Shown here in pieces: positions 9,143-59,128 of a DNA stretch of 64,000 nucleotides. A model generated the notes under the pieces. The model saw only the letters and a program-made list of their open reading frames with translations, had not been told where the DNA came from and ran no database searches. The DNA is taken from the IMG/VR virus record IMGVR_UViG_3300042319_002138, positions 1 to 64,000 of that record, one strand, 5' to 3'. Every line of letters starts with the position of its first letter. Positions within the stretch are counted from its first letter, which is position 1. Made by a program: the position numbers and the translations under genes.

Positions 9143-9442
9143 ATGGCGGTAGTAAAAAAAATAGAAAAAGAAGATGGTGTTGTTGAGTGTTTAATTGACT
9201 CATCAAACATTATAATGTCTGAATACGACGAAACTAAAAGTACTTTAGCTATTACATTTAAAGCGGGTACAAAATACCTTTATAAAGAAGTTTTAAAAAG
9301 GGATTATGTTCGTTTTGAAGTTTCTGAAAGCCAAGGAGAAGTTTTTAATAAAACTTTACGTAAATATGTATACGAAAAATTAGATAATATAGACGTTTCT
9401 CCTTTAAAAGAACAAATTAAGGAAATAAAAGGTATTGTTTAA
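9143..9442 (+). CDS. KTSC domain protein
   Basis: SSNI..EYD....L.ITFK.G..YLY..V....Y..F..SESQG..FN pattern. Confidence 0.8.
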   Translation: MAVVKKIEKEDGVVECLIDSSNIIMSEYDETKSTLAITFKAGTKYLYKEVLKRDYVRFEVSESQGEVFNKTLRKYVYEKLDNIDVSPLKEQIKEIKGIV

Positions 9443-9771
9443 TTTTTTGTGTAAGATACTACATCTACAATATCCATACATGGAGGGTTAACATCTGACT
9501 TACTTTTCGCAATAAAAACAAAAACAGGTCCTTCAGTGTAAACAATATATTTAAGTTCATCTGATATACCACCGTAACCTAAAAATTTAATTGTAATCTC
9601 TTCAAACCCTAGTTCGGATAATTTTCTTGATACTAGGGTTTTTACACTTTCCCCCGTACAATCAATGGAACTTAAAATATTTACAATTTCATTTGCAGTA
9701 TATTCCTGAATTCTTATTTCAGTTAATCTTTGTAACTGTGATTCTGTTAGTATAATATTTTTTCTTCTCAT
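9439..9771 (-). CDS. Hypothetical protein with IILTESQL leader
   Basis: Start reassigned to ATG 9771 (MRRKNIILTESQLQRL), just after the upstream gene's stop. Confidence 0.65.
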   Translation of the reverse strand: MRRKNIILTESQLQRLTEIRIQEYTANEIVNILSSIDCTGESVKTLVSRKLSELGFEEITIKFLGYGGISDELKYIVYTEGPVFVFIAKSKSDVNPPCMDIVDVVSYTKN

Positions 9772-9775
9772 ATTA

Positions 9776-10357
9776 TTAATTTTCATTGTAGTCTTCATCA
9801 TAATCTTCATCATAGTCAGAAGGGTCAAATCCAGATTCTCTTCTTTCAAAATCTTCTACATCTAACCCAGCTTCATAAGCTCTACCTTCTTCAAAGGCTT
9901 TATAATAAGTTGCTTCAACCCCCTCTTCGTAACCTTTTTGATATCCGTCTTGGATAGCTTCGTCATAACCTTCGTCATAACCTTTCTCGTATTTTTCTTC
10001 TAACTTATCTTCCATATCCCGTTTAGCTTCAGAATATCCATCACGATGACCCATATCATACCCTTGGGATTCACCTTCACTATAACCATTTTGACTCCCT
10101 GTATCTATACCCCTTTCATAAGCATTATAACCAAATTCATATAATGATTTAATTAAACTATCTAATTGTATAGTGTTTAAACCAAGATTATAAATAGAAT
10201 TAACTAAAGGACTAGTTTCGGTATTAAAAATATAAAAACCAAAATCATCAAATCTAGATAGTTTATTAGCTATTTCAGATTTTGAGGTTGGTTCAGATTC
10301 CCTAACCCAATCAAAATCGTTGTCTTCTTTTAATATTTTCTTAATTGTATTTCTCAT
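9776..10357 (-). CDS. Hypothetical protein with GYxxG repeats and KKILKE..DFDW leader
   Basis: Yae1/FliH-like GYxxG repeats; preceded by ATATTTAT on the minus strand. Confidence 0.65.
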   Translation of the reverse strand: MRNTIKKILKEDNDFDWVRESEPTSKSEIANKLSRFDDFGFYIFNTETSPLVNSIYNLGLNTIQLDSLIKSLYEFGYNAYERGIDTGSQNGYSEGESQGYDMGHRDGYSEAKRDMEDKLEEKYEKGYDEGYDEAIQDGYQKGYEEGVEATYYKAFEEGRAYEAGLDVEDFERRESGFDPSDYDEDYDEDYNEN

Positions 10358-10366
10358 TATCATTTA

Positions 10367-10386
10367 ATAAATATCATGATATTTAT
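10367..10386. promoter_or_regulatory. Back-to-back ATATTTAT putative late promoters (perfect 20-bp palindrome)
   Basis: ataaatatca|tgatatttat between divergent genes, one motif facing each gene. Confidence 0.65.
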
Positions 10387-10390
10387 GAAT

Positions 10391-11608
10391 ATGAATATAA
10401 ATGAAAAAGAAGTCGAAAAAGCTAATAGAAAAATTGACTTGGGTGGTTTTACAATGAATGATGAATTAAATCCTAAAATTTGGGATGAAAATCAAAAAAT
10501 GAAACCCGAAGTTAAAAAAAATCTTTTAAAAATAGCTGATGATTATTTTGAGAGTTTAAAAATACCTGGGGTTGACATTGAAGATGTTTGTATTACAGGT
10601 AGTTTGGCTAATTATAATTGGTCAAAATACTCTGACGTTGATTTACATATTATAATCGATTATAAAGATGTCCCTGTTGATGAAGATTTAGTACAAGATT
10701 TTTTTAAATCTAAAAGCTCTAATTGGAATAAGGAACATGACGTTAAAATTTATGATTATGACGTTGAATTATATGTACAAGATATAAATGAATCACACCA
10801 CTCAACAGGAGTTTATTCAATATTAAATAATGAATGGGTAACAAAACCACAAAACAAGAAAATTAATTTTAACGATAAATCTGTAAAAGATAAGGCTAAC
10901 GGAATTATGGACCGTATTGAAGATTTATATGATGAGTTAAATGATGGTGATTATGATGTTGCTGTTAAAGGTGTTGAAAAATTAACGGAAAAAATTAAAA
11001 AAATGCGTCAATCAGGTTTAGAGTCTGGTGGTGAATTTTCAGTAGAAAATATTGTTTTCAAAGTTTTACGTAGAAATGGAATGTTGGATAGATTGTATGA
11101 TATTAAGACAGTTGCTTACGATAAATCGGTAACACTAGAATCAATGCGTGAGTCAAAAAAAATTGATTCCCTTTTAGAATCAATTGAAGATGACCCATTT
11201 AAATGGATAAAAGATGTAGAAACAAAAACATTAATAGAAAAACAACCATATAGAAGTGCTGAATATGATATAGTTGGTGAATATTTTAAAAAAGAAAAAC
11301 CCGTTTATAAGGGTTGGTCTGTTATTTGGGACGGTTTTCAAGGAGTTGTTGAATGGAGAAATCAAGATGTACCACATTTATTTATTTTTGCAACACCTTA
11401 TTGGGATGGTGCTGATAATGTACCAGTAAATTATGATGAAAATTACGGTGATGATTACGGACATTTAGGATTTGTAAGTATTCCTGAATTTGAGTATAAA
11501 GAAGACTTAATCAATTGGATAGAAAACGATTATTTTAAAGGGGTGTATAAATTAATTATAGATTATACGGGCCCTTTAGTCGAATCAGTAGAAGATTTTA
11601 AACGGTAA
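10391..11608 (+). CDS. Pol-beta superfamily nucleotidyltransferase with C-terminal extra domain
   Basis: GS..NY....SDVDLH motif plus later VELY; start is 10385 or 10391. Confidence 0.75.
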   Translation: MNINEKEVEKANRKIDLGGFTMNDELNPKIWDENQKMKPEVKKNLLKIADDYFESLKIPGVDIEDVCITGSLANYNWSKYSDVDLHIIIDYKDVPVDEDLVQDFFKSKSSNWNKEHDVKIYDYDVELYVQDINESHHSTGVYSILNNEWVTKPQNKKINFNDKSVKDKANGIMDRIEDLYDELNDGDYDVAVKGVEKLTEKIKKMRQSGLESGGEFSVENIVFKVLRRNGMLDRLYDIKTVAYDKSVTLESMRESKKIDSLLESIEDDPFKWIKDVETKTLIEKQPYRSAEYDIVGEYFKKEKPVYKGWSVIWDGFQGVVEWRNQDVPHLFIFATPYWDGADNVPVNYDENYGDDYGHLGFVSIPEFEYKEDLINWIENDYFKGVYKLIIDYTGPLVESVEDFKR

Positions 11609-11656
11609 TTGGTGGTTTATTGAAGATTAAACATATTTATATAGAAAAAGAAAATT

Positions 11657-11944
11657 ATGGATAGTTATTATGCATTACACTTACCTTCGGGAGCTACATA
11701 TACAGCATACACGTATTATCAAATATATGTTAACGCTGGAGCTACTTTAGTATATAAAGGTGTTACATTACCCTCACCTTCGGCTGGACCTATAGTATTA
11801 AATCTAACTGTTAATTCTACTACAGATATAGCTGGTAGTTCGGGAATTGCTTTATTAGGTAAGAAAAAACCAGAAGCTTTTGCAGAAGGACCTGCTGGAC
11901 AAAACGGTCTTAACACGGATGGTACTTGGAATATAAGAGGATAA
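11657..11944 (+). CDS. Hypothetical (probable virion) protein
   Basis: 95-aa ORF after the motif at 11633. Confidence 0.6.
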   Translation: MDSYYALHLPSGATYTAYTYYQIYVNAGATLVYKGVTLPSPSAGPIVLNLTVNSTTDIAGSSGIALLGKKKPEAFAEGPAGQNGLNTDGTWNIRG

Positions 11945-11957
11945 AAAAAAATAGAAG

Positions 11958-14234
11958 ATGAATAAAAAATTATTAAATAGAATGTTGGAACTCTCTAACA
12001 TTAAACCAGTGATTAAAGAAGAAAAGATGAGTCTATCTAATTTTGAATTGGTTAAAGAATCTGTAAACGGTAAAATATATGCTGTTGTAAGAGAACAAAA
12101 TAAATATTATATAAAGAACGCTGATTCTAAAAATAATATCAATGAATCTGATTTTGATTACATTGGTGGTATAGTTAATAAGGGAAAAAAATCTTTTTAT
12201 TCTTATGAAGAGGCGGTTAAACATTTAAATTTAATGTTTGAAGAAATTAATAATCACTATAATGTAGATAATGTTAATTTGTTAGAATCAGATGTTTTAA
12301 ATGAGAAAAAATTTATTTTAAAATTAAAAAACAAAAAAACTGAACCAAAAGCTGAACCAAAAGTTGATAAAGGTGGTTTTGACTTTGGTGGAGACTCTGA
12401 AGAAAAGGAAACTTCTGATAAAGGTGGTTTTGACTTTGGTGGAGGTGATGATACTGAAGATACGGGGGATAGTGAATTTGACTTCGGTGGAGATGAAGAT
12501 ACTGAAGATACTGGTGATGATTCATTTGACTTCGGTGATGATACTGAAGATACAGGAGACGGTGAATTTGATTTTGGTGGAGACGATGAGGGAGTTGATT
12601 CCGAAGAAGACGATACTGATGTAGAAGAATTTGGTGATGATGATATCAAAGATATTCAAAGTACCACAGGTAAATTGGGTCAACAAATTAGAGATGTCGA
12701 GGATTTATCTTCTGATATGCAAAAATGGGTTGCTAAATCAGTTTTATCTGCTATGGATTTAGAAAATATGGATTCTGAAGATAAAAAAGATATTATTCGT
12801 ACAATAAAAAAGAAATCACAAGAAGAACCTGAAGAATCTGATGAAGAGTCTTTTGATTTTGGTGATGAGGAACCTGTAGAGGAATCTTCTTATATGTCTT
12901 ATATGGACGATAAATCATGTACACATTGTAATGGTTCGGGTTATGATGAATTCACTGATGAAACTTGTGAATGGTGTGAGGGTGAAGGAAAATTTATAAA
13001 TCCTAATGACACAAGTAATTATCGTAGATATATGGGTGATGGTACACACGATTCTTACATGAAAGAGAAAAAAGAAAGTTATTCAGATTCAGAATTAGAT
13101 AATTGGTTGCTGGATATGGAAATGGCTGGATTTGTTTCAACACCTTCTTACGAATCATACATGGGAGAAGACAACCCTCATATTGGTGGTGATGAGAATA
13201 TGGTTGATGGTGAATTATTATTAGATTATGATGATGAAAATTTATATGGTTTAAACCTAAATATGAGAAATAATCCTAATTTAGAGTATTCAGAAAATAA
13301 TAACATGAATCGTGGATATGGTAATTATATGTCTGATGTAACAGATAAATTTGAGACATATGAACAAGAAATTGCTTACCAAGATTTGTCGGATATGGCA
13401 TCGGAATATGGTTTTACACTAAGTCTTTGTCACGCTGATAAAACAGAAGACCCTGAAGAATCTACAATCTATTTTGATATCAAAGACGGTAGTAAAAAAT
13501 TATTAAAGGCTAGAATTAACTCTATTGGTAGTCTTGAAATTGGTACAATGAGAGGTAGACATTTTATTGGTGAACCAGTTGACTCTTTATCAGATTTTGA
13601 CGAAACTTTTGACGAAGAAGGAAAATTAAAAGATATGGGACCCCAAAGAGAAAAAGCACCTGAAAAACCTGACCGTGGAACTGAAACAATTCCCGGAACA
13701 CCTACTAAAACACCTGATAGAGAACGTCCTTCTAGAAGACCGTTTAATCCTCCCCCACATATTACGCCAGGTGAGGAACCAGGTCCAAAAGCTAGAGGTA
13801 GAAGATTAAATAATTATGACCCTACAATGGCTCCGGCTCCAGCAAAACAACCTGAAAAACCTGACCGTGGAACTGAGACAGTTCCTGGAACGCCGACTAA
13901 AACGCCTGATAAGGATAGACCATCTAGAAGGCCTTTTAATCCACCTCCTCACATTACGCCAGGAGAAGAACCAGGTCCAAAAGCTAGAGGTAGAAGAAGT
14001 TATATGAGTTATATGGGGGATGAAGATAAAACATCTAAGCCATCTCATGACAAACCTCGAAGACCTGGCCGTAATCCATTTGAAAAACCTATGGGGGATG
14101 AAGATAAAACATCTAAGCCATCTCATCCCAAACCTCGAAGACCTGGCCGTAATCCATTTGAAAAACCTCAAAGACCTGACAGTAATCCATTCAAAAGGCC
14201 TAATAATAATGAAGGTGACGTTAAGTTCTCATAA
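11958..14234 (+). CDS. Large acidic low-complexity protein (probable internal head protein) with DnaJ-type Zn finger
   Basis: FDFGG repeats, two CxxCxGxG, YM[SG]D repeats, Pro/Arg C-terminal repeats. Confidence 0.6.
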   Translation: MNKKLLNRMLELSNIKPVIKEEKMSLSNFELVKESVNGKIYAVVREQNKYYIKNADSKNNINESDFDYIGGIVNKGKKSFYSYEEAVKHLNLMFEEINNHYNVDNVNLLESDVLNEKKFILKLKNKKTEPKAEPKVDKGGFDFGGDSEEKETSDKGGFDFGGGDDTEDTGDSEFDFGGDEDTEDTGDDSFDFGDDTEDTGDGEFDFGGDDEGVDSEEDDTDVEEFGDDDIKDIQSTTGKLGQQIRDVEDLSSDMQKWVAKSVLSAMDLENMDSEDKKDIIRTIKKKSQEEPEESDEESFDFGDEEPVEESSYMSYMDDKSCTHCNGSGYDEFTDETCEWCEGEGKFINPNDTSNYRRYMGDGTHDSYMKEKKESYSDSELDNWLLDMEMAGFVSTPSYESYMGEDNPHIGGDENMVDGELLLDYDDENLYGLNLNMRNNPNLEYSENNNMNRGYGNYMSDVTDKFETYEQEIAYQDLSDMASEYGFTLSLCHADKTEDPEESTIYFDIKDGSKKLLKARINSIGSLEIGTMRGRHFIGEPVDSLSDFDETFDEEGKLKDMGPQREKAPEKPDRGTETIPGTPTKTPDRERPSRRPFNPPPHITPGEEPGPKARGRRLNNYDPTMAPAPAKQPEKPDRGTETVPGTPTKTPDKDRPSRRPFNPPPHITPGEEPGPKARGRRSYMSYMGDEDKTSKPSHDKPRRPGRNPFEKPMGDEDKTSKPSHPKPRRPGRNPFEKPQRPDSNPFKRPNNNEGDVKFS
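13659..13997 (+). repeat. Imperfect ~147-bp intragenic duplication (13659-13805 / 13851-13997)
   Basis: Encodes PEKPDRGTET.PGTPTKTPD..RPSRRPFNPPPHITPGEEPGPKARGRR twice, with mostly synonymous differences. Confidence 0.9.
14013..14168 (+). repeat. 78-bp near-perfect tandem duplication
   Basis: MGDEDKTSKPSH.KPRRPGRNPFEKP x2, differing at one codon. Confidence 0.9.
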
Positions 14235-14251
14235 ATAAGAAATAAAATAAT

Positions 14252-14284
14252 AAAAAACATAGTCTAAAAAGGCTATGTTTTTTT
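14252..14284 (+). terminator. Intrinsic terminator
   Basis: aaaaaacatagtc-taaaaa-ggctatgttttttt. Confidence 0.75.
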
Positions 14285-14310
14285 ATGCTCAAGACTAATA
14301 TTTATAGTAT

Positions 14311-14718
14311 ATGTATTTAATTTATATAAACAGAATTGGTAAAACATTTAAAGGTGAACATATGTTTGAATTTTTATTCTCAGACTCAACTGAATGGGAA
14401 TGGGATGAATCTTGGTATGAATCGTCTGTTATTACCGAAACAAGAGAATTAGCCCCCGACGAAAATATCATTAAACTAGTTGGTTCACTTAAAACTGACG
14501 AATTTGATTTGGAATTAGTTCAAGAAGATGGTGTACGTGATATTTATAATGCTGTAGAAGGTATTATAGCTTTAGGTTGGGAAAAACTACAAGATGATGA
14601 AGATTATCCAGAACAAAGAAGAATATTCCGTTTTGGGGACACAAAAAAATCTGTTGATGAACAACTATACGAGTATGACCTTGTATTAAAATATAAAGAA
14701 AACAAAGTAACAAAATGA
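14311..14718 (+). CDS. Hypothetical protein
   Basis: 135-aa ORF, ATG 5 nt after ATATTTAT. Confidence 0.7.
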   Translation: MYLIYINRIGKTFKGEHMFEFLFSDSTEWEWDESWYESSVITETRELAPDENIIKLVGSLKTDEFDLELVQEDGVRDIYNAVEGIIALGWEKLQDDEDYPEQRRIFRFGDTKKSVDEQLYEYDLVLKYKENKVTK

Positions 14719-22197: not shown

Positions 22198-22226
22198 AAT
22201 TTAATATTATTATTAAAAAATATGAT

Positions 22227-22258: not shown

Positions 22259-22296
22259 ATGTTAAAAAATTAGTATAATTAAGAAAAAAATTATAT

Positions 22297-23886: not shown

Positions 23887-24654
23887 ATGAAAATATTAAA
23901 ACCAGGTGAAGAAGGTACAGGTTTTTTAGTTGAATATGATTCAGGGTATATTAAACCTGAATTAACTTGCAAAGATGGCGTTTGTTCAAACGTTAATTTA
24001 ATTAGAGAATTTAAGTCTGGAATGAATTTCACTATGGACGGGCCTTTACCTGAAAAAATTGAAATATATGCCGTACTACAAAAGTGGGGTGTAGAAAATA
24101 AAAACGGTAGGGTCTACCCTAAAGATATCTTAGAAAGAGAAGCTAAAAGATACCAAGAGTTTATCAAAATGGGTACTTCTTTGGGTGAATTAAACCACCC
24201 AGAATCATCTATTATTGATGGTGAAAGGGTATCACATATGGTAACTGAATTATGGTGGGAAGGCAAAACTCTAATGGGTACATTAGAATTAGATACAACA
24301 CCAGGATATCATAAAATGGGAATTATTTCATCAGTTGGTGATAAAGTTCTTAATATGATTAGAAAAGGTTGGACCGTAGGTATCTCATCTAGAGGTGTAG
24401 GTTCACTTAAAAATGAAGGTGGTAAGAATGTAGTTCAAGATGACTTTGAGTTAATCTGTTGGGATATTGTAACTTCACCATCAACTCCAGGTTCTTGGAT
24501 TTCTTCTGATAAGAATGACCTTAAACCTTATACGGAATCTACTAATAAAAAAATGGATTTATTAAATAGTAGTTCAAATATAATAGCAGATAACCTATAT
24601 TTATCTGAAAATGAATCTAAATTATTAAACAATTTAAATAAATTTTTACTATAA
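23887..24654 (+). CDS. gp21: Prohead core protease (T4 gp21-like)
   Basis: NKNGRVYP, LGELNHP, GISSRGVGS, WDIVTSPSTPG motifs. Confidence 0.92.
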   Translation: MKILKPGEEGTGFLVEYDSGYIKPELTCKDGVCSNVNLIREFKSGMNFTMDGPLPEKIEIYAVLQKWGVENKNGRVYPKDILEREAKRYQEFIKMGTSLGELNHPESSIIDGERVSHMVTELWWEGKTLMGTLELDTTPGYHKMGIISSVGDKVLNMIRKGWTVGISSRGVGSLKNEGGKNVVQDDFELICWDIVTSPSTPGSWISSDKNDLKPYTESTNKKMDLLNSSSNIIADNLYLSENESKLLNNLNKFLL

Positions 24655-24724: not shown

Positions 24725-25003
24725 ATGAAAAAAGTAATTAAATTAAACGAAGCTGATTTGGAAAAATTAGTTCAAAAAATTATTAGAGAAGAAGGTGAAC
24801 AAGGAGGTCAGGAAATGTCACAAGGTTCAGAAGCAAAAACTGGAAAAGTGTTAGACTCAACAGTTTTTAATCAGTTGCTTACAACATTAAAATCTAAATC
24901 AGCTGACGAACAAGTTAATATTATAATGACATTATTAAAACAAATGGATTTAAAAGGTGGTTTTGGTGTGAAATTTAAACAAGCTTTAAAAACTTTAAGT
25001 TAA
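24725..25003 (+). CDS. Hypothetical protein with KKVIKLNEADL leader
   Basis: 92-aa ORF. Confidence 0.7.
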   Translation: MKKVIKLNEADLEKLVQKIIREEGEQGGQEMSQGSEAKTGKVLDSTVFNQLLTTLKSKSADEQVNIIMTLLKQMDLKGGFGVKFKQALKTLS

Positions 25004-25527
25004 TGAATATTCGTAAAATTATAAAAGAAGAATTACTTAAGGAAGTTGGTGGGTATGATGATAAAAATATCATGTCTATTCATGCCGGAGTTTCTATGAC
25101 TACTTTAGCTAACGTATATAATGACTTAACACTCGTTATCGAAGGTTTAGCTAATGCTGTGGTGGATGGACATTCAAAGAATGATTTTATAAGTTATTTA
25201 AGTGAAACTTCTGAAGTTATTGGTTCTCTTATCAAAGAGGTTGAAACCGTTATAAACGAATTTACTGAAGACGATTTAATTAGAGATGCTAGAAGCATGA
25301 TTAAAAAACTAAACACTTTCAAGAGAAGAGTAGATGTTCTTTCTAATTTTTCAGACGCTATGGGTAATGATGAAGTTTTCACCGAAAAAATAAAACAATT
25401 ATTAATTGATTTATTACCTTCTTTACATAAGTTTGGTGAACAATTACAAATTACTGGTCATGAGTTTAAACATAGATTGGCTGGTCATGGTAGAAGTTCT
25501 TTTGGTTCAGGATTTAGTGATAATTAA
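25003..25527 (+). CDS. Hypothetical protein with RKIIKEE leader
   Basis: 174-aa ORF. Confidence 0.7.
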   Translation: MNIRKIIKEELLKEVGGYDDKNIMSIHAGVSMTTLANVYNDLTLVIEGLANAVVDGHSKNDFISYLSETSEVIGSLIKEVETVINEFTEDDLIRDARSMIKKLNTFKRRVDVLSNFSDAMGNDEVFTEKIKQLLIDLLPSLHKFGEQLQITGHEFKHRLAGHGRSSFGSGFSDN

Positions 25528-25876: not shown

Positions 25877-26305
25877 TTAATCTTGGTATTCTTTAGGTAA
25901 TCCCATTCTATCAGCTAATTTTTTAAATAAACCCGAATGTTCATCACTTTGTGGTAAATCTTCCCCAACGGACGCATGTATTAATTCATGTACTATAATC
26001 CATTTTAGATATTCCTTATCTTTTAAAGCCTTTTCTTTAATACCCATCTCTGCGTTTTCACCATTTTTAGGATGATTAAAACCAGCTATTTTCCCTTTTT
26101 TAATAGAGTTATCTATATTAATCTCTATGTTAGGTAGGGTTAATTCTTTGCCTGTTATCTCCCGATAAACATTTTTTAATTTTTTTTCTATAGAAGATTT
26201 TAAGAATTTGATTTCTTCTAAATCCCCATTTTTTTCTGTTAAATGAGGTTTTTCAATTCTTTCACTTAGAATTTGATTTACAATGTCGGACATAAGATAC
26301 TTCAT
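25877..26305 (-). CDS. SprT-like zinc metalloprotease
   Basis: HELIH motif plus downstream H...FK; behind ATATTTAT on the minus strand. Confidence 0.7.
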   Translation of the reverse strand: MKYLMSDIVNQILSERIEKPHLTEKNGDLEEIKFLKSSIEKKLKNVYREITGKELTLPNIEINIDNSIKKGKIAGFNHPKNGENAEMGIKEKALKDKEYLKWIIVHELIHASVGEDLPQSDEHSGLFKKLADRMGLPKEYQD

Positions 26306-26443: not shown

Positions 26444-27721
26444 ATGGCTGAAACAAGAAAGTCTATCATCGATGAAGCTTTTATGGAAGCGGAGCACATA
26501 GACAATGCTTTCAAAGCCAACGCGAAAGAAATACTAGCTCATACAATGAGTCTAGAAATTGAGGAAATGGTAAAAGAATCTCTAGGAGATTGGAGTGGCT
26601 TAACAGAAGACGAAGATGAAGAGAATGTGGATTTAGAGTTAGACAATGACTCTGATGTAGCCGGCTTAGGTGCTGGTAACGATGAAGAATTCGACTTTGA
26701 CAGTTTAGATTTAGATGACGAGGACGATGATGACGACCTTGATGGTTTAGATTTAGATGACGAGGACGATGATGATGTAGATGTTGTAGACCTTACGGGT
26801 GAGGAAGATATCGAGAAAGTAGTTAATGTGTTCAAAAAAATGAGCCCAGAAGATGAAATCGAGGTTGTTCAAGACGGAGGTAACATTGAAATCAAAGATA
26901 ACGCAACTGGTGCTGAGTACAGAATAGAACTTGGTGGTTCTGACGACACTGAAATGTTTGATGATGAAGAAGACATGTTTGATGATGAAGAAGATATGTT
27001 TGATGATGAAGAAAACGAAGATGATGAAGCCTTTAATAGAATGGGTGAAGAAGTTATCTACGAAATTCATTTATCTGAAGATGAAGAAGGTGATGATGAT
27101 GAATACATGTCTGATAAATACATGTCTGATAAATCTAAGGATGAAGATGGTGAAATGGAAGAAGGTAGAATGCCTCGTACATTATCTAAAGCTGGAAAAG
27201 TTGGGAATCGTAAATCATCTGACATGAACTCAAACCGTGAAAAATTAGGTATGAGAGAATCAACAACACCAAGAGTTACACAGTTAATGACTGAAAACAA
27301 AGTTCTAAAAAACAAAGTTAGTTCTATCAATTCTGAAAATAAGAGTTTAACAGAAGACTATAACAAAATGGTCGACGCTCTTAAAGAGTTCAGAAATAAA
27401 TTAAATGAGGTAGCTATCTTTAATAGCAACCTTACATACACAGTAAGATTGTTTACTGAACACTCAACTACTAAAGACGAGAAGGTGGATATCATCAAAA
27501 GATTTGATGAGGCAAAAACTCTTAAAGAATCTAAAAATATCTACAAAAATTTAGTTAAAGAAATTTCTAAAACTAAAGCTCCAATCAAAGAATCTATTGA
27601 AAATAAATTCAATGATACTAAAAGTAGTGGTTCATCAACACAAATTACTGAATCAAAAGTTTATGTAGACCCCCAACTAGAAAATATGAAAAGATTGTGG
27701 GAATACGAATATAAACACTAA
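26444..27721 (+). CDS. Prohead scaffold/core protein (gp22-like)
   Basis: Very acidic with C-terminal coiled coil; directly upstream of the capsid gene. Confidence 0.7.
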   Translation: MAETRKSIIDEAFMEAEHIDNAFKANAKEILAHTMSLEIEEMVKESLGDWSGLTEDEDEENVDLELDNDSDVAGLGAGNDEEFDFDSLDLDDEDDDDDLDGLDLDDEDDDDVDVVDLTGEEDIEKVVNVFKKMSPEDEIEVVQDGGNIEIKDNATGAEYRIELGGSDDTEMFDDEEDMFDDEEDMFDDEENEDDEAFNRMGEEVIYEIHLSEDEEGDDDEYMSDKYMSDKSKDEDGEMEEGRMPRTLSKAGKVGNRKSSDMNSNREKLGMRESTTPRVTQLMTENKVLKNKVSSINSENKSLTEDYNKMVDALKEFRNKLNEVAIFNSNLTYTVRLFTEHSTTKDEKVDIIKRFDEAKTLKESKNIYKNLVKEISKTKAPIKESIENKFNDTKSSGSSTQITESKVYVDPQLENMKRLWEYEYKH

Positions 27722-27751: not shown

Positions 27752-29551
27752 ATGGGATATTTATTAAAATCTGGAGAGGTTGGTAATATCGGATTAAAGC
27801 ACCAAAAAGCTATCCGTGAGGCAACTGTAAACAAATGGAATGACCTTGGGTTCTTAGAAGGACTTACAGGACATGTACGTGAGAATATGGCTTTGTTGTA
27901 TGAAAACCAAGCATCTGTTCTTATCAATGAGACTGACACATCGGGTGGTGCATCTACTGGTTCTTTTGAAACTGTAGTTTTCCCTATCGTAAGACGTGTA
28001 TTCTCTAAATTATTAGCTAACGACATCGTGTCTGTACAAGCGTTGAACTTACCTATCGGTAAATTGTTCTACTTTGTACCTAAGATTTCTGAAAGAATCG
28101 AAGCTACTGAAGGTGAAAGCACAGTTTATAAGCACGGTGAACCAATCGTTACACCTTGTCTTTCTGTAGATAACGCAACTTGTCCTGAGACTACATATGT
28201 AGAATGTGCTAAAAATCTTTACGATAGATTTTACAATGATGGTTTATATGACCAATCAAAAGGTAAAATCACTTTAGTTGTTACTAACGGTGTACCAGTT
28301 ATTTGGACATCTTGTACAACAGGTAACGAATTTACAGATGGTGTATCAGCTTTTGCTGGTGACGGTTCTGTTAGAACTCAAATCCTTGAATTAACAGGAT
28401 TTAACAATAATGGTCAAGGTAGACTTTTAGGTCCTGATGGAAATGAAATGGATACTGAGGCTTTCTTAGCTTCTTTAGCTGTTACTGTCGGTGGTGGTAG
28501 TCTTAAAGATAAAGATGGTGAAGTTATTTACGCTCCAGGTGATGAAGTTCCTGTAAGAGTTGTAACACAAAGATATGGTAAAGGTATTGTTAATTATGGT
28601 GATATTTGTACTGGTGAAGGTATTATGTATCTTGAAGTAGATTTAACTCACCCTAAGTGTATTACTTGTTCATCAGGTACATTTGATGGTTATATCGGAG
28701 CTCAATCTGGTAATACATCTATCGTACCTGGAGTTGGTGTATCTACATTAGGTGGTGTTAGTTTTGTTATCACTTATAGACAATACGCTGACTTAGAAAT
28801 GGAATCTCAAATGGGTGAAGTTTCTTTCGAATTAGATTCTGTAACGGTATCTGTAACTGAAAGAAAACTAAGAGCTACTTGGACTCCTGAATTAGCACAA
28901 GATGTTAGTGCATTCCACAACATCGACGCTGAAGCTGAATTGACAGCATTACTTTCTGAGCAAGTTGCGGCAGAAATTGACCGTGAAATCTTACGTGACT
29001 TACGTACAGGTGCAGCATGGCAATTACGTTGGGATTACAACGGATGGAAGAGACTACCTAACAACAACGGTTACACTCAAAAAGACTGGAACCAAACGTT
29101 AGTAACAGCTATCAACCAAATCTCAGCACAAATTCACAAAGCTACATTGAGAGGTGGAGCTAACTTCGTAGTTGTATCTTCTGAAGTATCTGCTGTTTTT
29201 GATGATTTAGAATACTTCCACGTATCTAACGCTTCTCCTGAGCAAGACCAATATAACATGGGTATCGAAAGAGTAGGTTCACTTTCAGGAAGATATACTA
29301 TCTACCGTGACCCTTACGCACCAGCATACTCTGTATTGATTGGACACAAAGGAAAATCATTGTTAGACACAGGTTACATCTACGCACCGTATGTACCTCT
29401 ACAATTAACACCTACAATGTACAATCCGTTTAACTTTGTACCTGTTAAAGGTATCATGACTCGTTACGCCAAAAAAATGGTGAACAACAGGTTTTACGGC
29501 CATATCCGTGTAGACGGTTTACGTACATTTGACGTAAGAGAATTAAGATAA
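27752..29551 (+). CDS. gp23: Major capsid protein (T4 gp23-like)
   Basis: LLYENQ, PIVRRVF, RKLRATWTPELAQD..AFHNIDAEAEL, GYIYAPYVPL, GIMTRY. Confidence 0.95.
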   Translation: MGYLLKSGEVGNIGLKHQKAIREATVNKWNDLGFLEGLTGHVRENMALLYENQASVLINETDTSGGASTGSFETVVFPIVRRVFSKLLANDIVSVQALNLPIGKLFYFVPKISERIEATEGESTVYKHGEPIVTPCLSVDNATCPETTYVECAKNLYDRFYNDGLYDQSKGKITLVVTNGVPVIWTSCTTGNEFTDGVSAFAGDGSVRTQILELTGFNNNGQGRLLGPDGNEMDTEAFLASLAVTVGGGSLKDKDGEVIYAPGDEVPVRVVTQRYGKGIVNYGDICTGEGIMYLEVDLTHPKCITCSSGTFDGYIGAQSGNTSIVPGVGVSTLGGVSFVITYRQYADLEMESQMGEVSFELDSVTVSVTERKLRATWTPELAQDVSAFHNIDAEAELTALLSEQVAAEIDREILRDLRTGAAWQLRWDYNGWKRLPNNNGYTQKDWNQTLVTAINQISAQIHKATLRGGANFVVVSSEVSAVFDDLEYFHVSNASPEQDQYNMGIERVGSLSGRYTIYRDPYAPAYSVLIGHKGKSLLDTGYIYAPYVPLQLTPTMYNPFNFVPVKGIMTRYAKKMVNNRFYGHIRVDGLRTFDVRELR

Positions 29552-29646: not shown

Positions 29647-30345
29647 ATGGGAAAAAAGAAAATTGAAATACCTGAAGATGTTTTATCAGAAATGATAAGA
29701 TTATATAATGAAGACTATATTGGTACACCTTCATTATCTGATAGATTTGGTTATCATAAATCTATTATTTTAAGAAGTTTTAAAGATAAAGGTGTACAAC
29801 TAGGTCCATCTGGCCGTAAATGGACTGGTGGTAAAGAAGAGGCAGCTAAAAAATATCACTCTAAACCTGAAGTTAAAAAAAGAAAAAGTGATAACCACAA
29901 AATATGGTCAGAAAAAAACCGTGAACATCTACGAGAATACCACACCAAATGGAGAGAAGAAAATCGTGAAGACTTAAATGAGTACAAACGTATCTACGAA
30001 AAAACAAAAAAAGATTCCGACCCATCATATCGATTGGCATGTTATACAAGAACAGCTGTTTACACTTGTTTAAAAGAAAGAGATGTAACAAAATATAAAA
30101 GTACTTTTGATTTATTACCTTATTCTTTGGAGGAATTAATCACCCATTTGGAATCCCAATTTAAAGAAGATATGACATGGGATAACTATGGTGAGTGGCA
30201 TGTTGACCATATTAAACCTATGACTTCATTTAATATCCAATCACCTGAAGATAAATCTTTTCAAGAGTGTTGGTCGTTAAATAATTTACAACCTCTATGG
30301 GGTGTGGAAAATCTTTCCAAAGGTTCAAGATATTTATTAATATGA
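29647..30345 (+). CDS. Free-standing HNH (homing) endonuclease
   Basis: WHVDHIKP...NLQPLW..ENLSK, basic helical N-terminal region. Confidence 0.8.
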   Translation: MGKKKIEIPEDVLSEMIRLYNEDYIGTPSLSDRFGYHKSIILRSFKDKGVQLGPSGRKWTGGKEEAAKKYHSKPEVKKRKSDNHKIWSEKNREHLREYHTKWREENREDLNEYKRIYEKTKKDSDPSYRLACYTRTAVYTCLKERDVTKYKSTFDLLPYSLEELITHLESQFKEDMTWDNYGEWHVDHIKPMTSFNIQSPEDKSFQECWSLNNLQPLWGVENLSKGSRYLLI

Positions 30346-30689
30346 ATCTACGTAAGATTATAAAAGAAGAGATTAATGATTTTGATTGGATTCCCAAAAA
30401 AAGTATTATAACCAATGAGTTTGATTTTGATGGGGAGTTAAATACTGACGAGGCTAATCAAAATTTTAAGAATGAAGTTAATGGGTATTATGCTATTTCA
30501 ACACCAAAGGGTAAGGAATCTCCTGAAACAATAATAGCTTATGGACCTGTATTCTATATAAAACAAGTTTTAAGATATATTGATAGTTTAAACGACCCTT
30601 ATTGGGGTGGCATGGATTTATATCTTGGGGTTGTTAAATACTCTAGGAAAGATAAAGATAACGTATTATCTTTAATAAAATATTATTAA
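30342..30689 (+). CDS. Hypothetical protein with RKIIKEE..DFDW leader
   Basis: Start reassigned to ATG 30342 (ATGA overlap with the HNH stop). Confidence 0.7.
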   Translation: MNLRKIIKEEINDFDWIPKKSIITNEFDFDGELNTDEANQNFKNEVNGYYAISTPKGKESPETIIAYGPVFYIKQVLRYIDSLNDPYWGGMDLYLGVVKYSRKDKDNVLSLIKYY

Positions 30690-30690
30690 T

Positions 30691-31335
30691 ATGAATCTTA
30701 AAAAAATCATAAAAGAAGAGGTTGACGAATTTGATTGGGCTCGTGAAATAGAACCAAAATGGGAACCCCAAGTCGGTGATAAATTTATTTGTAAACATGG
30801 TTTTAATAGGAATAGTATGTCAGATTATTATGGGGGTGCCGCATATGTGGAAGGAAAAGTCTATACTATATATAGAATTACACCCGACATTCATAATGAT
30901 GATAATGTCATATTATGGGGTAAAGAAGATGAAGATAACAACGGTGTTTATAAAAGAGCCACTGAACTTTATTTTGAATCTCTAAGTGAATCTAAAGAAG
31001 ATGATTTTGAATGGGCTAGAGGTGAGGTTATTTTTACAATTAATGATATTATTGGTAAAAAATGTACTTATAGAGAAAATAATTTAGTAGACCTAGAACA
31101 AGAGTATGAAATCTCCCAACTTAAAAGAGGTGACGTTGATTTGGGTCCCATTAGATATAATGATAAGTATTCTTATTGGGTGGTGACTAGATTAGAAGGT
31201 GATGATGCTTTTATTAATTTAGCTGATGGTACTGAATTAGATTATAAAATAGAAGAAATAGAACAATACGTTAATTTAGGTGTATGGGTTTTATTTGATG
31301 ATAATGGTAATATTTTAAACGATTTTTATAAATAA
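30691..31335 (+). CDS. Two-domain hypothetical protein, each domain preceded by a DF[DE]WAR motif
   Basis: MNLKKIIKEEVDEFDWARE ... LSESKEDDFEWARG. Confidence 0.7.
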   Translation: MNLKKIIKEEVDEFDWAREIEPKWEPQVGDKFICKHGFNRNSMSDYYGGAAYVEGKVYTIYRITPDIHNDDNVILWGKEDEDNNGVYKRATELYFESLSESKEDDFEWARGEVIFTINDIIGKKCTYRENNLVDLEQEYEISQLKRGDVDLGPIRYNDKYSYWVVTRLEGDDAFINLADGTELDYKIEEIEQYVNLGVWVLFDDNGNILNDFYK

Positions 31336-34208: not shown

Positions 34209-34261
34209 GGGTAAACCTAAAATTTTTCTTTTTTCTGGGATATTTATATAAAAACATTAAA

Positions 34262-34690
34262 ATGAAAAAAATAATCAAACTTAACGAGCAAGATTTAGAG
34301 AGGTTAGTTAAAAAAGTTATTGCTGAAGAAGAGAATTCTTCACAAGGTAAAACTCCTGAAAAGAAGACAACAATGACAAAACACCCAGCTTATAGTGTTA
34401 TTGATAAATTAGGTAGAGATTTGGAATCTTTAAAAACAGAATTTAAAGATGGTATCGCTGATGCTGTTTCTGGTTCTGACGGTTATCATAGTGAAATAGA
34501 TACATTTTCTAGTGACTTTACAAAATTCATTGGTAAACTTGAGGATTTAAAGAAAAAAATTAATGATTACCAAGTTATTGATAATGCCAGACATAAAGAA
34601 ATGAAAGAAAAACAAAAACAACAGGATAAGTACCAACAGCATATGAGGGTAAGAGAAGCCGGAAGAAATGGTTCAAATTATTCTTACTAA
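34262..34690 (+). CDS. Hypothetical protein with KKIIKLNEQDL leader
   Basis: 142 aa; behind ATATTTAT at 34240. Confidence 0.7.
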   Translation: MKKIIKLNEQDLERLVKKVIAEEENSSQGKTPEKKTTMTKHPAYSVIDKLGRDLESLKTEFKDGIADAVSGSDGYHSEIDTFSSDFTKFIGKLEDLKKKINDYQVIDNARHKEMKEKQKQQDKYQQHMRVREAGRNGSNYSY

Positions 34691-44535: not shown

Positions 44536-44537
44536 AA

Positions 44538-47320: not shown

Positions 47321-47353
47321 TATTAATTTTTTGTGTTAATATATTTATTATTT

Positions 47354-48112: not shown

Positions 48113-48127
48113 TTTTTTTACAAATGC

Positions 48128-48658: not shown

Positions 48659-48662
48659 ATTT

Positions 48663-49967: not shown

Positions 49968-49997
49968 ATTTAATTTTTTAATTGTTTATTATTATTA

Positions 49998-50594: not shown

Positions 50595-50656
50595 TTTTAT
50601 AATATATAAAAATTTTAGTTAAATTAAAGTCTAACTAATTTTTATTTTTTACATTT

Positions 50657-54387: not shown

Positions 54388-54563
54388 AGTTCAAAATTAT
54401 CTTTAGTATTTTCTTTTATTGAAACAAATTCTCTAATAGTCTTACCTAACTCTGTATCATCAGAATAAGTTTTAACTAATAATTCTACAACCTCCATTCT
54501 TAAAGCCTCATGTCTTTCATTAATGGGGTTATTTTCCAAATCCGTATATACTTGATTTTTCAT
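54384..54563 (-). CDS. Small hypothetical protein
   Basis: ATG at 54563. Confidence 0.5.
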   Translation of the reverse strand: MKNQVYTDLENNPINERHEALRMEVVELLVKTYSDDTELGKTIREFVSIKENTKDNFEL

Positions 54564-58006: not shown

Positions 58007-58053
58007 AATCTATATTTTATACCAATATAAACTATTAGAAAAGTTTAGTAAAT

Positions 58054-58079
58054 AAAAAACCCGACTTAATGTCGGGTTT
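58054..58079 (-). terminator. Intrinsic terminator
   Basis: aaacccgac-ttaat-gtcgggttt with A-run on the left. Confidence 0.8.
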
Positions 58080-58083
58080 AGTA

Positions 58084-58137
58084 TTACTTTTTTGGTGTTC
58101 CTTTGTTACCTTTGCAACTACATCCTTTTGTTCTCAT
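58084..58137 (-). CDS. 17-aa basic CxC micropeptide (MRTKGCSCKGNKGTPKK)
   Basis: A-rich leader, ATG, TAA, then terminator; last position of an operon. Confidence 0.45.
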   Translation of the reverse strand: MRTKGCSCKGNKGTPKK

Positions 58138-58160
58138 GTTTTCTTTTTTTTAGTTGTTTG

Positions 58161-58742
58161 TTATTGTACCCTTTTAACTTTACTATTTAAAGTTTTTAAG
58201 ATTTTTACGTTTTCTTGAATCATTTTTTTATCAAAATATTTTTCAACAATACTAGGTAATGCTTTTGATATTTCCTCAGCAATCATTTGTCTAATTACAT
58301 TTTCATTTAGTGTACTAGAATTTTTTGCTACAGGTTTTTTTTGTTCTACTATATGTCTTTTTTGTTCCATATAATCAAACTCGTCTTCTTCAGAATAGTA
58401 TTCTTCTTTTACACTACCGTATTTTGGGTTTATTTCTTTGATGTCCTCATCATCCAAAGAAAATGTCCCAACAGCATCTGGTTGTGGAATTGGGTTTTCT
58501 AACATCGCCCTCTGAATTTCAGGTGGTAATTTAGATTCTTTAACTCTTTGTTTATACATATCACTTCCTATTGCTACTTTAGGTACAGAATTTCTAACAG
58601 GTTCACTAATTTCTTCACTTAAAGAAGCTTGTCTACTTGTAACATTAGATTCTAAAATTGCCATGTCAGTTTTATCAAACTGTCTAGCTCTTTCATCGAT
58701 AACTTTCGCTTTTTGTAGTATTGCTTTTAATCTTGGGTCCAT
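58161..58742 (-). CDS. Hypothetical protein
   Basis: 193 aa. Confidence 0.65.
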   Translation of the reverse strand: MDPRLKAILQKAKVIDERARQFDKTDMAILESNVTSRQASLSEEISEPVRNSVPKVAIGSDMYKQRVKESKLPPEIQRAMLENPIPQPDAVGTFSLDDEDIKEINPKYGSVKEEYYSEEDEFDYMEQKRHIVEQKKPVAKNSSTLNENVIRQMIAEEISKALPSIVEKYFDKKMIQENVKILKTLNSKVKRVQ

Positions 58743-59128
58743 TATTCAAATGTTGCTTGTTTATAAATTTTTATCATACTCCTATCTCCGTTAGGATTAT
58801 ATTTTGGTACGCCTGATTTTCTATCAGAAATAGGTTCATAAAACGTTTGACCCGTTTTAATCCAATTGCTAATTCTATCTACCCTAAAAGTTTTCCAACC
58901 TTCAGGTTCGGTATCAGTAACCCCTTGAGTTTGATAGACTCTAATTATTGGGTTATTGGCTAAAGATTCTCCATAAACATAAGGTTCAATCCATCTCCAA
59001 CCTCTTACTTCTGTTTCATCACCCTCATAATAAATTCTAGCAACCTTATGTTTTTCAATAGAATCTTCTATTTCATTTGGTCGTACTTCTTCTAATATAA
59101 TATTGCTTAATAGAGAGTAAAGTTTCAT
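58742..59128 (-). CDS. WYL-domain protein
   Basis: IYY.G......R.IEPY.YG....IRVYQ....WKTFRVDRI; start at 59128. Confidence 0.7.
   Translation of the reverse strand: MKLYSLLSNIILEEVRPNEIEDSIEKHKVARIYYEGDETEVRGWRWIEPYVYGESLANNPIIRVYQTQGVTDTEPEGWKTFRVDRISNWIKTGQTFYEPISDRKSGVPKYNPNGDRSMIKIYKQATFE

What the first reader, a model, noticed from the sequence alone, without database searches (positions are those of the whole stretch)
9439..59128. Shared N-terminal leaders on unrelated late proteins: candidate capsid-cargo tagging system
Seen: about a dozen otherwise unrelated ORFs start with short basic/aliphatic leaders ending in (I/L)xE. Class A: MNIRKIIKEE (25003), MNLRKIIKEEINDFDW (30342), MNLKKIIKEEVDEFDW (30691), MRNTIKKILKEDNDFDW (10357 -). 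Class B: MKKVIKLNEADLEKLVQKIIREE (24725), MKKIIKLNEQDLERLVKKVIAEE (34262), MRRKNIILTESQL (9771 -). Weaker cases: WYL (IILEE), SprT (ILSE..LTE), 11958, 14715, 34690. The E..DF[DE]W tag also recurs internally before a second domain (30691 ORF LSESKEDDFEW; NTase LLESIEDDPFKW). Nearly all lie in units behind ATATTTAT. Known: T4 gp21 cleaves after (I/L)xE, and T4 internal proteins use a cleavable N-terminal capsid-targeting sequence. Inference: a modular tag loads diverse effectors (NTase, WYL, metalloprotease, unknowns) into the head for injection, with tandem fusions acting as polyproteins.
Basis: partly seen in the sequence, partly recalled or inferred. Interest (0 to 1): 0.78.

Follow-up and report, generated by a model that had tools for sequence, protein, structure and literature searches.

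The report
Shared leader and junction tags
A freshwater jumbo T4-like phage and its uncultured relatives put the same short N-terminal leader, and a matching internal junction motif, on dozens of unrelated proteins per genome, most plausibly to load them into the capsid and cut them into about 110-residue units for injection, but no virion data exist yet.

Summary
The window is the first 64 kb of a 226-kb T4-superfamily phage from lake water.

**Leader.**
- Fifteen proteins in this genome start with M(K/R)NLI(K/R)KILKE or MNI(K/R)KIIKE. A 23-residue variant (class B) lies mainly in the head gene cluster.
- Three related genomes carry 21-24 N-terminal copies each.
- T4 and a Flavobacterium T4-like phage have none.
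- The Glu and the Ile/Leu two residues before it never vary, which fits the L/I-x-E site of the gp21-type prohead protease this phage encodes.

**Junction.**
- An internal motif, (L/I)-N-E-S-x-D-F-D-W-V-K-D-V-x-P, separates unrelated modules of about 110 residues, up to 12 or more per protein.
- It aligns with the second half of the leader.

**Supporting results.**
- AlphaFold2 places leader and junctions in low-confidence linkers between folded domains.
- Codon use shows selection acts on the peptide, not the DNA.
- The genes sit behind a late-type promoter motif.
- More than 1,100 protein clusters worldwide carry the tag, and almost none have a known domain.

**Verdict.** Capsid targeting plus polyprotein processing, a much enlarged relative of the T4 internal-protein system, is the best explanation. 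It rests on inference only: no proteomics, cleavage or packaging data exist.

The parts
9439..9771 (-). Class-B-like leader protein (110 aa), MRRKNIILTESQLQRL...
   Evidence: Orthologues in G001-G003 keep MKK.I.L.ESQ.
9776..10357 (-). Class A leader protein (193 aa), MRNTIKKILKEDNDFDWVRESEP
   Evidence: HMM score 26.7 bits exactly at the N-terminus. Orthologues in G001 and G002.
10367..10374 (-). ATATTTAT promoter-like motif just upstream of the 10357 gene
10376..11608 (+). NTase-like protein (phrog_36119) with no N-terminal leader. An extra C-terminal module is attached through a junction.
   Evidence: Orthologues in G001 and G003 end before the junction, and the module occurs in a leader protein of G003.
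11171..11227 (+). Internal junction LLESIEDDPFKWIKDVETK (aa 266-284 of the 10376 protein)
11958..14234 (+). Acidic 758-aa protein with a class-B-like start, INESDFDY at aa 61-68 and six FDFG repeats. Membership uncertain.
23887..24654 (+). Prohead protease, gp21 / Peptidase_S77 family. Candidate processing enzyme.
   Evidence: PF03420, E = 3.5e-27. 414 relatives in IMG/VR.
24725..25003 (+). Class B leader protein (92 aa), directly after the protease
   Evidence: Twelve of 15 class B genes in four genomes lie within about 12 kb of the protease or capsid genes.
25003..25527 (+). Class A leader protein (174 aa, helical bundle), a conserved head-cluster gene
   Evidence: In 16 orthologues the first 20 residues show 92% column identity, against 42-60% for the rest. 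Atlas model.
25877..26305 (-). SprT-like zinc metalloprotease. Its leader is degenerate here and canonical class A in orthologues.
   Evidence: PF10263, 27.1 bits. Orthologue N-termini.
26444..27721 (+). Scaffold-like, very acidic protein. N-terminus MAETRKSIIDEA resembles the leader core.
   Evidence: The resemblance is seen by eye only and was not picked up by the HMM.
27923..27931 (+). Predicted capsid-protein maturation site I58-N-E60, inside the gp23-family gene 27752-29551
   Evidence: It aligns with the LTE cut in T4 gp23 and is conserved as INE or ISE in G001-G003.
30330..30337 (+). ATATTTAT motif 4 nt before the ATG of the 30342 gene
30342..30689 (+). Class A leader protein (115 aa), a single module
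   Evidence: Its module is fused behind another module in P0021 and P0023.
30691..31335 (+). Class A leader protein (214 aa) with two beta-rich modules
   Evidence: AlphaFold2: domains at pLDDT 70-87, leader residues 1-21 and junction residues 97-111 below 50.
30982..31020 (+). Internal junction L98-S-E-S-K-E-D-D-F-E-W-A-R110
   Evidence: D105, F106 and W108 are invariant or nearly so in 22 homologues. The junction aligns with the N-terminal leader of single-module homologues.
34240..34247 (+). ATATTTAT motif 14 nt before the 34262 gene
34262..34690 (+). Class B leader protein (142 aa)
   Evidence: Orthologues lie next to the capsid genes in G001-G003.

Best explanation
The leader and the junction are short, disordered peptide signals of a cargo system tied to head assembly.

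**Proposed steps (all inferred).**
1. Late in infection the tagged proteins are made from units behind the ATATTTAT motif.
2. The basic amphipathic N-terminal helix (LIKKILKE) binds the assembling prohead core, perhaps the very acidic scaffold. This takes the protein inside the shell.
3. The gp21-type prohead protease then cuts after the invariant Glu: I-(I/L)-(K/R)-E at the N-terminus and (L/I)-N-E before Ser at each internal junction.
4. Multi-module proteins are thereby reduced to free units of about 80-130 residues, small enough to leave through the tail with the DNA.
5. The conserved D-F-D-W-V-K-D-V-x-P stretch next to the cut is either a prime-side or exosite determinant for the protease, or a second docking element.

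**What is shown.** The motifs, their positions, their link to unrelated modules, their disorder in the models, peptide-level selection, the head-cluster origin and the late-type promoter.

**What is inferred.** Binding to the core, cleavage, packaging and injection.
For: 1. T4-type head machinery is present, including an S77 protease. The capsid protein has a conserved I-x-E at the position of T4's maturation cut.
2. In 81 of the 82 N-terminal class A leaders that could be anchored (four genomes), P3 is I or L in all 81 and P2 is K or R in 75. All 82 carry the Glu, which sits at residue 9 or 11 in 76 of the 81. T4's targeting tag is 10 residues and is cut after Glu10.
3. Internal junctions keep (I/L/V/M)-x-E just upstream in 66 of 76 cases, against a 19% background, and in 302 of 318 cases in the global set. 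The basic helix decays at these internal positions.
4. The junction aligns with the second half of the leader, and the same module occurs behind either one.
5. The tagged parts are unrelated. There are 61 BLAST clusters for 82 proteins and 88 clusters for 143 modules. Only 2 of 561 family pairs reach hhalign probability 90.
6. AlphaFold2 gives the leader and junctions pLDDT below 50, between folded domains of different fold types. Yet they are the best conserved segments.
7. Class B genes cluster with the head genes. In distant relatives the only leader genes sit right after the capsid gene.
8. ATATTTAT is shared with the terminase, portal, protease, sheath, tube and endolysin genes.
9. A lysozyme domain occurs both alone without a leader (171977) and with leader plus modules (71476), like an endolysin versus a virion lysin.
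10. T4 and the Flavobacterium phage immuto have no match. Codon use at the leader columns equals the genome-wide use.
Against: - No proteomic, cleavage or packaging data exist, and the clade has no cultured member in the collections searched.
- (I/L)-x-E is a low-information motif in a Lys/Glu/Ile-rich proteome.
- The strongest conservation is in D-F-D-W, which T4 gp21 specificity does not explain.
- Twenty to forty different cargo proteins per genome is many, although SPN3US heads hold about 50 proteins (PMC7411985 abstract).
- The 10376 protein has a junction but no N-terminal leader.
- The modules are on average acidic, about -5 net charge per 100 residues, unlike the basic T4 internal proteins (own knowledge).
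- The leader has no sequence similarity to the T4 tag.
- Metatranscriptome contigs showed scaffold and capsid genes but not the leader genes. That result is uninformative.
Confidence: 0.55

Rival explanations
1. The motifs are recognition signals for another trans-acting factor or destination. One candidate is cutting by the SprT-like zinc protease encoded inside the head cluster. Another is handling by the phage ClpB/ClpC-like AAA+ protein. A third is targeting to the membrane, tail or baseplate rather than the head interior.
For: - The SprT-like gene lies between the protease and scaffold genes and itself carries the leader in relatives.
- Another SprT-like gene lies 1 kb from a 1489-aa polyprotein.
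- Polyvalent phage proteins are predicted to be processed by zincin-type peptidases (PMC5512222).
- The Clp-like gene is conserved in G001-G003.
- The leader is a cationic amphipathic helix, and D-F-D-W is not part of the known gp21 specificity.
Against: - The invariant P3 Ile/Leu and P1 Glu match the S77-family rule exactly.
- No SprT match was found in G001, which has many leaders. That record is only 64% complete.
- No known Clp degron looks like this (own knowledge).
- Eleven residues with four charges make a poor membrane anchor (inference).
Confidence: 0.2
2. The leader and junction are mainly a gene-shuffling device. Conserved ends (promoter, start codon, leader or linker) let recombination swap and fuse modules, and the peptide itself is only a tolerated flexible linker.
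For: - Modules are combined in many different ways between phages.
- The promoter sits at a fixed 4-8 nt before the ATG in 27 of 33 leader genes, so promoter and leader travel together.
- The conserved tag and promoter of the T-even internal-protein genes have been proposed as recombination points (own knowledge, not checked here).
Against: - Synonymous sites in the leader are randomised to the genome-wide codon use while the amino acids stay fixed.
- Trp, Phe and Glu are nearly invariant across more than 1,000 clusters.
- A passive linker would not be the most conserved part of the protein.
Confidence: 0.15
3. The leader is an RNA-level or translation-level feature of leaderless late mRNAs, and the peptide is a by-product of A/U-rich first codons.
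For: - The promoter-like motif ends 4-8 nt before the ATG, so the transcripts may be leaderless.
- The leader codons are A/T-rich.
Against: - Codon choice follows the genome average.
- The full motif recurs deep inside long reading frames.
- Trp, Asp and Phe positions up to codon 25 are conserved.
- A Flavobacterium T4-like phage has no match.
- Structural genes with the same promoter motif lack the leader.
Confidence: 0.05

Closest known systems
T4 capsid targeting sequence (CTS) of internal proteins IPI, IPII, IPIII and Alt
   Same: - A tag of about 10 N-terminal residues is shared by otherwise unrelated proteins.
- It ends in (L/I)-x-Glu, the site of the gp21-family prohead protease.
- The tagged genes lie in variable regions of the genome.
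- The tag resembles the scaffold N-terminus. In T4, MKTYQEFIAEA resembles gp22 MLKEQLIAEA. Here RKIIKEE resembles RKSIIDEA (PMC3012670, PMC9026906).
   Different: - There is no sequence similarity to the T4 tag, and the leader profile finds nothing in T4.
- The tag here is basic.
- It is followed by a second motif, D-F-D-W-V-K-D-V-x-P.
- There are 15-40 tagged genes per genome rather than about four.
- It also occurs internally as a junction in multi-module proteins.
- Packaging and cleavage are not demonstrated.
Polyvalent proteins of phages and conjugative elements (Iyer et al. 2017, PMC5512222)
   Same: - Phage-encoded polypeptides with many unrelated domains.
- Predicted to travel with the DNA and to be cut into active parts.
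- Lysozyme is among the fused domains.
   Different: - The modules here are almost all unknown. Of 116 proteins scanned, Pfam finds NUDIX in 3 and lysozyme in 1.
- The proteins have no embedded peptidase domain.
- A regular, conserved junction motif and a common N-terminal leader are not features described for polyvalent proteins.
Propeptides of the inner-head and ejection proteins of phiKZ, 201phi2-1 and SPN3US
   Same: - Jumbo phages with a gp21-related protease that trims many head proteins after Glu.
- The propeptides are thought to act like targeting tags.
- Heads hold about 50 proteins (PMC5694885; PMC9026906).
   Different: - Their motif is S/A-x-E.
- Their propeptides are often longer than 100 residues and belong to paralogue families.
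- No shared short leader on unrelated proteins and no repeated junction has been reported for them.
Encapsulin cargo-loading peptides
   Same: A short disordered peptide directs diverse cargo into a shell with the HK97 fold (own knowledge).
   Different: - Encapsulin peptides are usually C-terminal and are not cleaved.
- Their sequence is different.
- No phage head or injection is involved. This comparison was not tested here.

Membership tests
T4-type capsid targeting sequence / internal proteins | A short N-terminal propeptide (10-20 aa) shared by otherwise unrelated proteins | tested here: met
   82 leaders fall in 61 unrelated clusters. Fifteen of 17 regular-expression hits lie at Met starts.
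T4-type capsid targeting sequence / internal proteins | The propeptide ends in the L/I-x-E site of a gp21-family protease encoded by the same phage | tested here: met
   P3 is I or L in 81 of 81 anchored leaders. All 82 leaders carry the Glu. PF03420 protease. This is a sequence-level test only.
T4-type capsid targeting sequence / internal proteins | Sequence homology to the T4 tag MKTYQEFIAE | tested here: not met
   The leader profile finds no match in T4. T4 tags were read.
T4-type capsid targeting sequence / internal proteins | Late expression together with head genes | tested here: inconclusive
   The genes share an oriented ATATTTAT motif with structural genes. No transcript data exist for the leader genes.
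T4-type capsid targeting sequence / internal proteins | The protein is found in the prohead or virion with the tag removed, and the tag is sufficient for packaging | not testable with these tools
   The clade is uncultured and no proteome is available.
Polyvalent proteins (PMC5512222) | Two to 15 distinct domains in one phage-encoded polypeptide | tested here: met
   Up to 12 matched stretches per protein. Eight mutually unrelated modules occur in one 1582-aa protein.
Polyvalent proteins (PMC5512222) | The domains are recognised conflict or anti-defence families, often with an embedded zincin peptidase | tested here: not met
   Pfam finds nothing in 8 of 9 giant proteins. In the global set only 5 of 116 proteins have any hit. 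SprT-like is a separate gene.
phiKZ/SPN3US-type head propeptides | An S/A-x-E cleavage motif and long paralogous propeptides | tested here: not met
   The motif here has I or L at P3, the leader is 9-11 aa up to the Glu, and the tagged proteins are unrelated.
Single repeated domain family (the junction as part of a fold) | Modules are homologous and the motif lies inside the folded domain | tested here: not met
   Only 2 of 561 hhalign pairs reach probability 90. Junctions and leader have pLDDT below 50 between folded domains of different type.

The most novel reading that the evidence does not exclude
A large clade of freshwater jumbo T4-like phages uses a two-part peptide code. An N-terminal basic helix acts as the entry ticket to the prohead. 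A repeated (L/I)-N-E|S-x-D-F-D-W junction acts as the cut mark. With this code each phage pre-loads dozens of different proteins of about 110 residues, drawn from more than 1,000 unknown families and freely shuffled between phages. They are injected with the DNA as a ready-made host-takeover or anti-defence arsenal.
Probability: 0.4. Interest if true: 0.85.

Novelty: new variant of a known kind. Interest (0 to 1): 0.78.

Why it matters
**If the tag works as proposed.**
- It would mark the complete set of injected proteins of a whole phage clade by sequence alone: more than 1,100 clusters of unknown function. That would be a large, pre-sorted pool of candidate host-takeover and anti-defence proteins.
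- The capsid-targeting principle, so far known from four T4 proteins, would be shown to have been scaled up into a combinatorial cassette system with its own processing signal.
- It would offer a second natural tag for loading foreign proteins into phage heads.

**If the destination turns out to be different.** A conserved disordered motif on about a tenth of a phage's genes is still an unexplained sorting or processing signal worth solving.

Tried and rejected
- **Cultured relatives.** A megablast of 22 kb against GenBank phages found nothing. A tblastn of the 25003 protein found nothing. The nearest capsid proteins are only 42-44% identical.
- **Function of the tagged proteins.** Pfam, PHROGs and PDB sequence searches of leader proteins and giant polyproteins were almost all empty.
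- **Fold searches.** ESM Atlas gave no useful lead beyond a helical bundle for the 25003 protein. Foldseek against the PDB for the 30691 model found nothing at E <= 0.001, only weak matches to tandem Tudor, KOW and SH3-like barrels.
- **RNA evidence.** Three lake metatranscriptome runs (Logan contigs) show scaffold and capsid genes of related strains. They show nothing over the leader genes and no transcript ends, so this is uninformative.
- **Strict DNA pattern.** The pattern for DDFDW(V/I)(K/R)D gave only 5 hits in IMG/VR, all in this clade. It is too strict for a census.
- **Literature.** Searches for the motif, or for phage polyproteins cut by prohead proteases, found no prior description.
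- **Rejected: a paralogue family**.
- **Rejected: a single repeated domain**.
- **Rejected: a compositional or translation artefact**.
- **Cases dropped.** The WYL-like 58742-59128, 14715 and 34690 proteins are not members. The WYL-like gene sits in the replication-gene cluster with no promoter motif before it.
- **Scaffold resemblance.** The leader resembles the scaffold N-terminus by eye only; the HMM does not score it.

Full report
**What the window is.** The 64-kb window is the start of a single 226,303-bp phage contig with 30.8% G+C. It encodes:
- a T4-type large terminase;
- a gp20 portal (PF07230);
- a gp21-family prohead protease (PF03420, E = 3.5e-27);
- a very acidic scaffold-like protein;
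- a gp23 major capsid protein (PF07068).

The DNA is found almost complete in many lake-water metagenomes. No close cultured relative is in the phage collection. The nearest capsid proteins, at 42-44% identity, belong to an uncultured 484-kb phage, a Microcystis phage and the Flavobacterium phage immuto. IMG/VR holds 414 contigs that encode relatives of the protease.

- All strong cases lie at the stated coordinates.
- Genome-wide there are 15 class A leaders, 11 of them outside the window, plus one full internal copy at 85450.
- A simple class A pattern hits the first 30 residues of 16 of 249 genes. Shuffles give 0.015.
- In six-frame translation, 15 of 17 hits start at a Met.
- After removing 28 residues, the proteins share no BLASTP similarity except one paralogous pair.
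- Three large relatives (210, 380 and 318 kb) have 37, 39 and 26 profile matches. By my own stricter count they carry 24, 23 and 21 N-terminal class A leaders, against 14 here.
- Controls: T4 has 0 matches, Flavobacterium phage immuto 0, the Microcystis phage 1 weak match and the 484-kb phage 6 weak matches. The feature is therefore specific to this clade and is not a by-product of A+T-rich genomes.

**Anatomy of the leader.**
- There are 82 N-terminal class A leaders in four genomes. All carry the Glu.
- In the 81 that could be anchored, the Glu sits at residue 11 in 46 (M-K/R-N-L-I-K/R-K-I-L-K-E) and at residue 9 in 30 (M-N-I-K/R-K-I-I-K-E).
- The residue two before the Glu is Ile or Leu in 81 of 81. 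The residue one before is Lys or Arg in 75 of 81. The next residue is mostly Glu, Ser, Asn or Asp.
- Half of the leaders (41 of 82) continue with D-F-D-W and then V/I-K/R-D-V/I-x-P.
- Class B (MKK-h-I-K-L-N/T-E-x-D-L-x-x-L-V-K-K-I-I-x-E-E) is a class-A-like core with an N-terminal extension that holds another h-x-E.
- Codon choice at the conserved positions matches the genome-wide use. For example, AAA is 78-85% of Lys codons against 87%, and GAA is 88% of Glu codons against 81%. The constraint is therefore on the peptide, and the copies are old.

**The internal junction.**
- In the four genomes I found 76 internal copies of the W-centred motif. In 66 of them (I/L/V/M)-x-E lies directly upstream, with the Glu six or seven residues before the Trp. 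The background is 19%.
- The consensus is (L/I)-(N/K)-E-S-x-D-F-D-W-(V/I)-(K/R)-D-(V/I)-x-P.
- One 1582-aa protein has seven junctions and a 1256-aa protein has six. Spacing is about 80-130 residues.
- The basic helix is lost at internal positions, while h-x-E and D-F-D-W are kept.
- Homologues of the 30691 protein show that the pieces are interchangeable. The same C-terminal module occurs behind a junction, or directly behind an N-terminal leader in 120-aa proteins, or with other partner modules including that of the neighbouring 30342 gene. The junction aligns column for column with the second half of the leader.
- Homologues of the 186485 protein show the same shuffling and further leader variants such as M-P/S-K-N-F-F-x-R/K-I/L-K-E-S.

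**The tagged parts are unrelated and independently folded.**
- The 82 leader proteins fall into 61 BLAST clusters, and only three clusters have paralogues within one genome.
- 143 modules fall into 88 clusters. Modules inside one giant protein belong to different clusters.
- Among 34 module families, only 2 of 561 profile-profile pairs reach 90% probability.
- The AlphaFold2 model of the 30691 protein has two beta-rich domains at pLDDT 70-87. The leader (residues 1-21) and the junction (97-111) are below 50.
- The model of the 186485 protein has three alpha/beta domains. Segments 1-28, 134-220 and 344-361, which hold the leader and both junctions, are below 50.
- Yet these segments are the best conserved. 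D105, F106 and W108 are invariant or nearly so in 22 homologues. The first 20 residues of the 25003 protein show 92% column identity in 16 orthologues, against 42-60% elsewhere.
- Conserved but disordered segments are the signature of motifs read by another protein.

**Links to the head.**
- Aligned with T4 gp23, the capsid protein has a conserved I-N-E or I-S-E where T4 is cut after L-T-E.
- The class B 24725 and class A 25003 genes lie directly after the protease.
- Of 15 strict class B genes in four genomes, 12 lie within about 12 kb of the protease or capsid genes.
- In distant relatives (protease about 50% identical) the gene order is terminase, portal, 20850-like, protease, scaffold, capsid. 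The only leader genes, one to three of them with M-K-x-L-I-K-K-L-L-K/R-E, follow the capsid gene directly. The tag therefore seems to have arisen in head-cluster proteins and then spread.
- The SprT-like protease gene inside the cluster has a degenerate leader here and a canonical one in relatives.
- The scaffold N-terminus M-A-E-T-R-K-S-I-I-D-E-A is conserved and resembles the leader core. This parallels T4, where the tag MKTYQEFIAEA resembles gp22's MLKEQLIAEA. The resemblance is by eye only.

**Promoter motif.**
- ATATTTAT is not over-represented in the genome as a whole: 99 copies against 84 expected.
- It is strongly oriented and positioned. Forty-nine genes have it within 50 nt upstream, against 11 for the reverse complement and 0-20 for permutations.
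- It precedes the terminase, portal, protease, sheath, tube and endolysin genes.
- The phage encodes its own sigma-70-family factor.
- It precedes 9 of 16 leader genes against 43 of 233 others (p = 0.0014).
- In leader genes it ends only 4-8 nt before the ATG in 27 of 33 cases. The same layout is seen on an unrelated metagenomic contig. That the motif drives late expression is inferred, not shown.

**Global extent.**
- A profile of 40 leaders found 1,175 proteins at E <= 0.001, and 60 at E <= 1e-10, among 1.84 billion cluster representatives. A single protein has up to 12 matched stretches.
- Of the top 148, 110 start with the leader. They hold 318 internal junctions, 302 of them with h-x-E upstream. 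The median spacing is 112 residues.
- Pfam recognises only NUDIX (3 proteins), lysozyme (1) and MIB_HERC2 (1) in 116 of them.
- In this genome one leader protein carries a lysozyme domain (71476), while a plain lysozyme without leader exists at 171977.

**Interpretation.**
- The best-supported reading is a much enlarged analogue of the T4 capsid-targeting and internal-protein system (PMC3012670, PMC9026906), combined with polyprotein processing. It also recalls the 'polyvalent proteins' predicted to travel with phage DNA (PMC5512222).
- Proposed course: the basic helix takes the protein into the prohead core. The S77 protease cuts after the invariant Glu at the leader and at each junction. The resulting units of about 110 residues are small enough to leave through the tail, as argued for T4 IPI*.
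- Weak points:
  - there is no direct evidence;
  - D-F-D-W conservation is unexplained;
  - the modules are on average acidic;
  - the 10376 protein has a junction but no leader;
  - (I/L)-x-E carries little information on its own.
- Rivals:
  - another reader or destination, such as the SprT-like protease, the Clp-like ATPase, the membrane or the tail (0.2);
  - a recombination cassette with a passive linker (0.15);
  - an RNA-level feature (0.05).

**Verdict.** I rate it a new variant of a known kind. Nothing like the leader-plus-junction code turned up in the literature held here.

Noticed in passing
window 30330-30344, 10357-10374 (-), and G000 184614, 210285, 217548 (-), 220940, 222300: In class A leader genes the ATATTTAT motif ends only 4-8 nt before the ATG. 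In structural genes the gap is 12-38 nt. This suggests leaderless late mRNAs and a promoter-leader cassette that moves as one unit.
   Followed up: partly
window 27752-27769: The first codons of the major capsid gene (ATGGGATATTTATTAAAA, MGYLLK) themselves contain the promoter-like sequence GATATTTATTAAA.
   Followed up: no
window 21643-23376: A holin-family gene (PF05105) and a glutamine-synthetase-like gene (PF00120, PF03951) lie between the portal and prohead protease genes. These are unusual passengers in a head morphogenesis cluster.
   Followed up: no
window 6316-8799 (-): An 827-aa ClpB/ClpC-like double AAA+ protein with a Clp_N domain. It is conserved at about 70% identity in three related jumbo phages.
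   Followed up: partly
window 11958-14234: A very acidic 758-aa protein with six (D/E)-x-F-D-F-G repeats, a junction-like INESDFDY near the N-terminus and a CxxC pair. The acid-aromatic repeats recall the D-F-D-W motif.
   Followed up: partly
window 33402-34142 (-); G000 219603 (-) and 220952: A large paralogue family with an N-terminal L-L-E-G-R-x-E-D-V-x-K-K-Y block has many members in all four genomes. Some members start with class-A-like leaders and others lack them.
   Followed up: partly
window 29647-30345: An endonuclease VII-like gene (phrog_1035) follows the capsid gene directly. It keeps this position in distant relatives.
   Followed up: no
window about 41400-54400 (-): A long run of genes whose N-termini look like sugar-nucleotide and glycosyltransferase enzymes, for example a GDP-mannose dehydratase-like start at 47320. 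This rests on inspection of the sequence only.
   Followed up: no
G000 107014-113559 (outside the window): Three tandem genes of 642-845 aa share an almost identical N-terminus (MSDNTRLVGLKKDKN...). They look like a fibre-type paralogue set.
   Followed up: no
L155 (JGI metagenome contig, 42 kb) 1271-15182: An array of six adjacent leader or junction genes, including a 531-aa leader-lysozyme and a 1489-aa protein with 12 or more junctions. Each has the promoter motif 4-8 nt before the ATG, and a SprT-like gene lies 1 kb away.
   Followed up: partly
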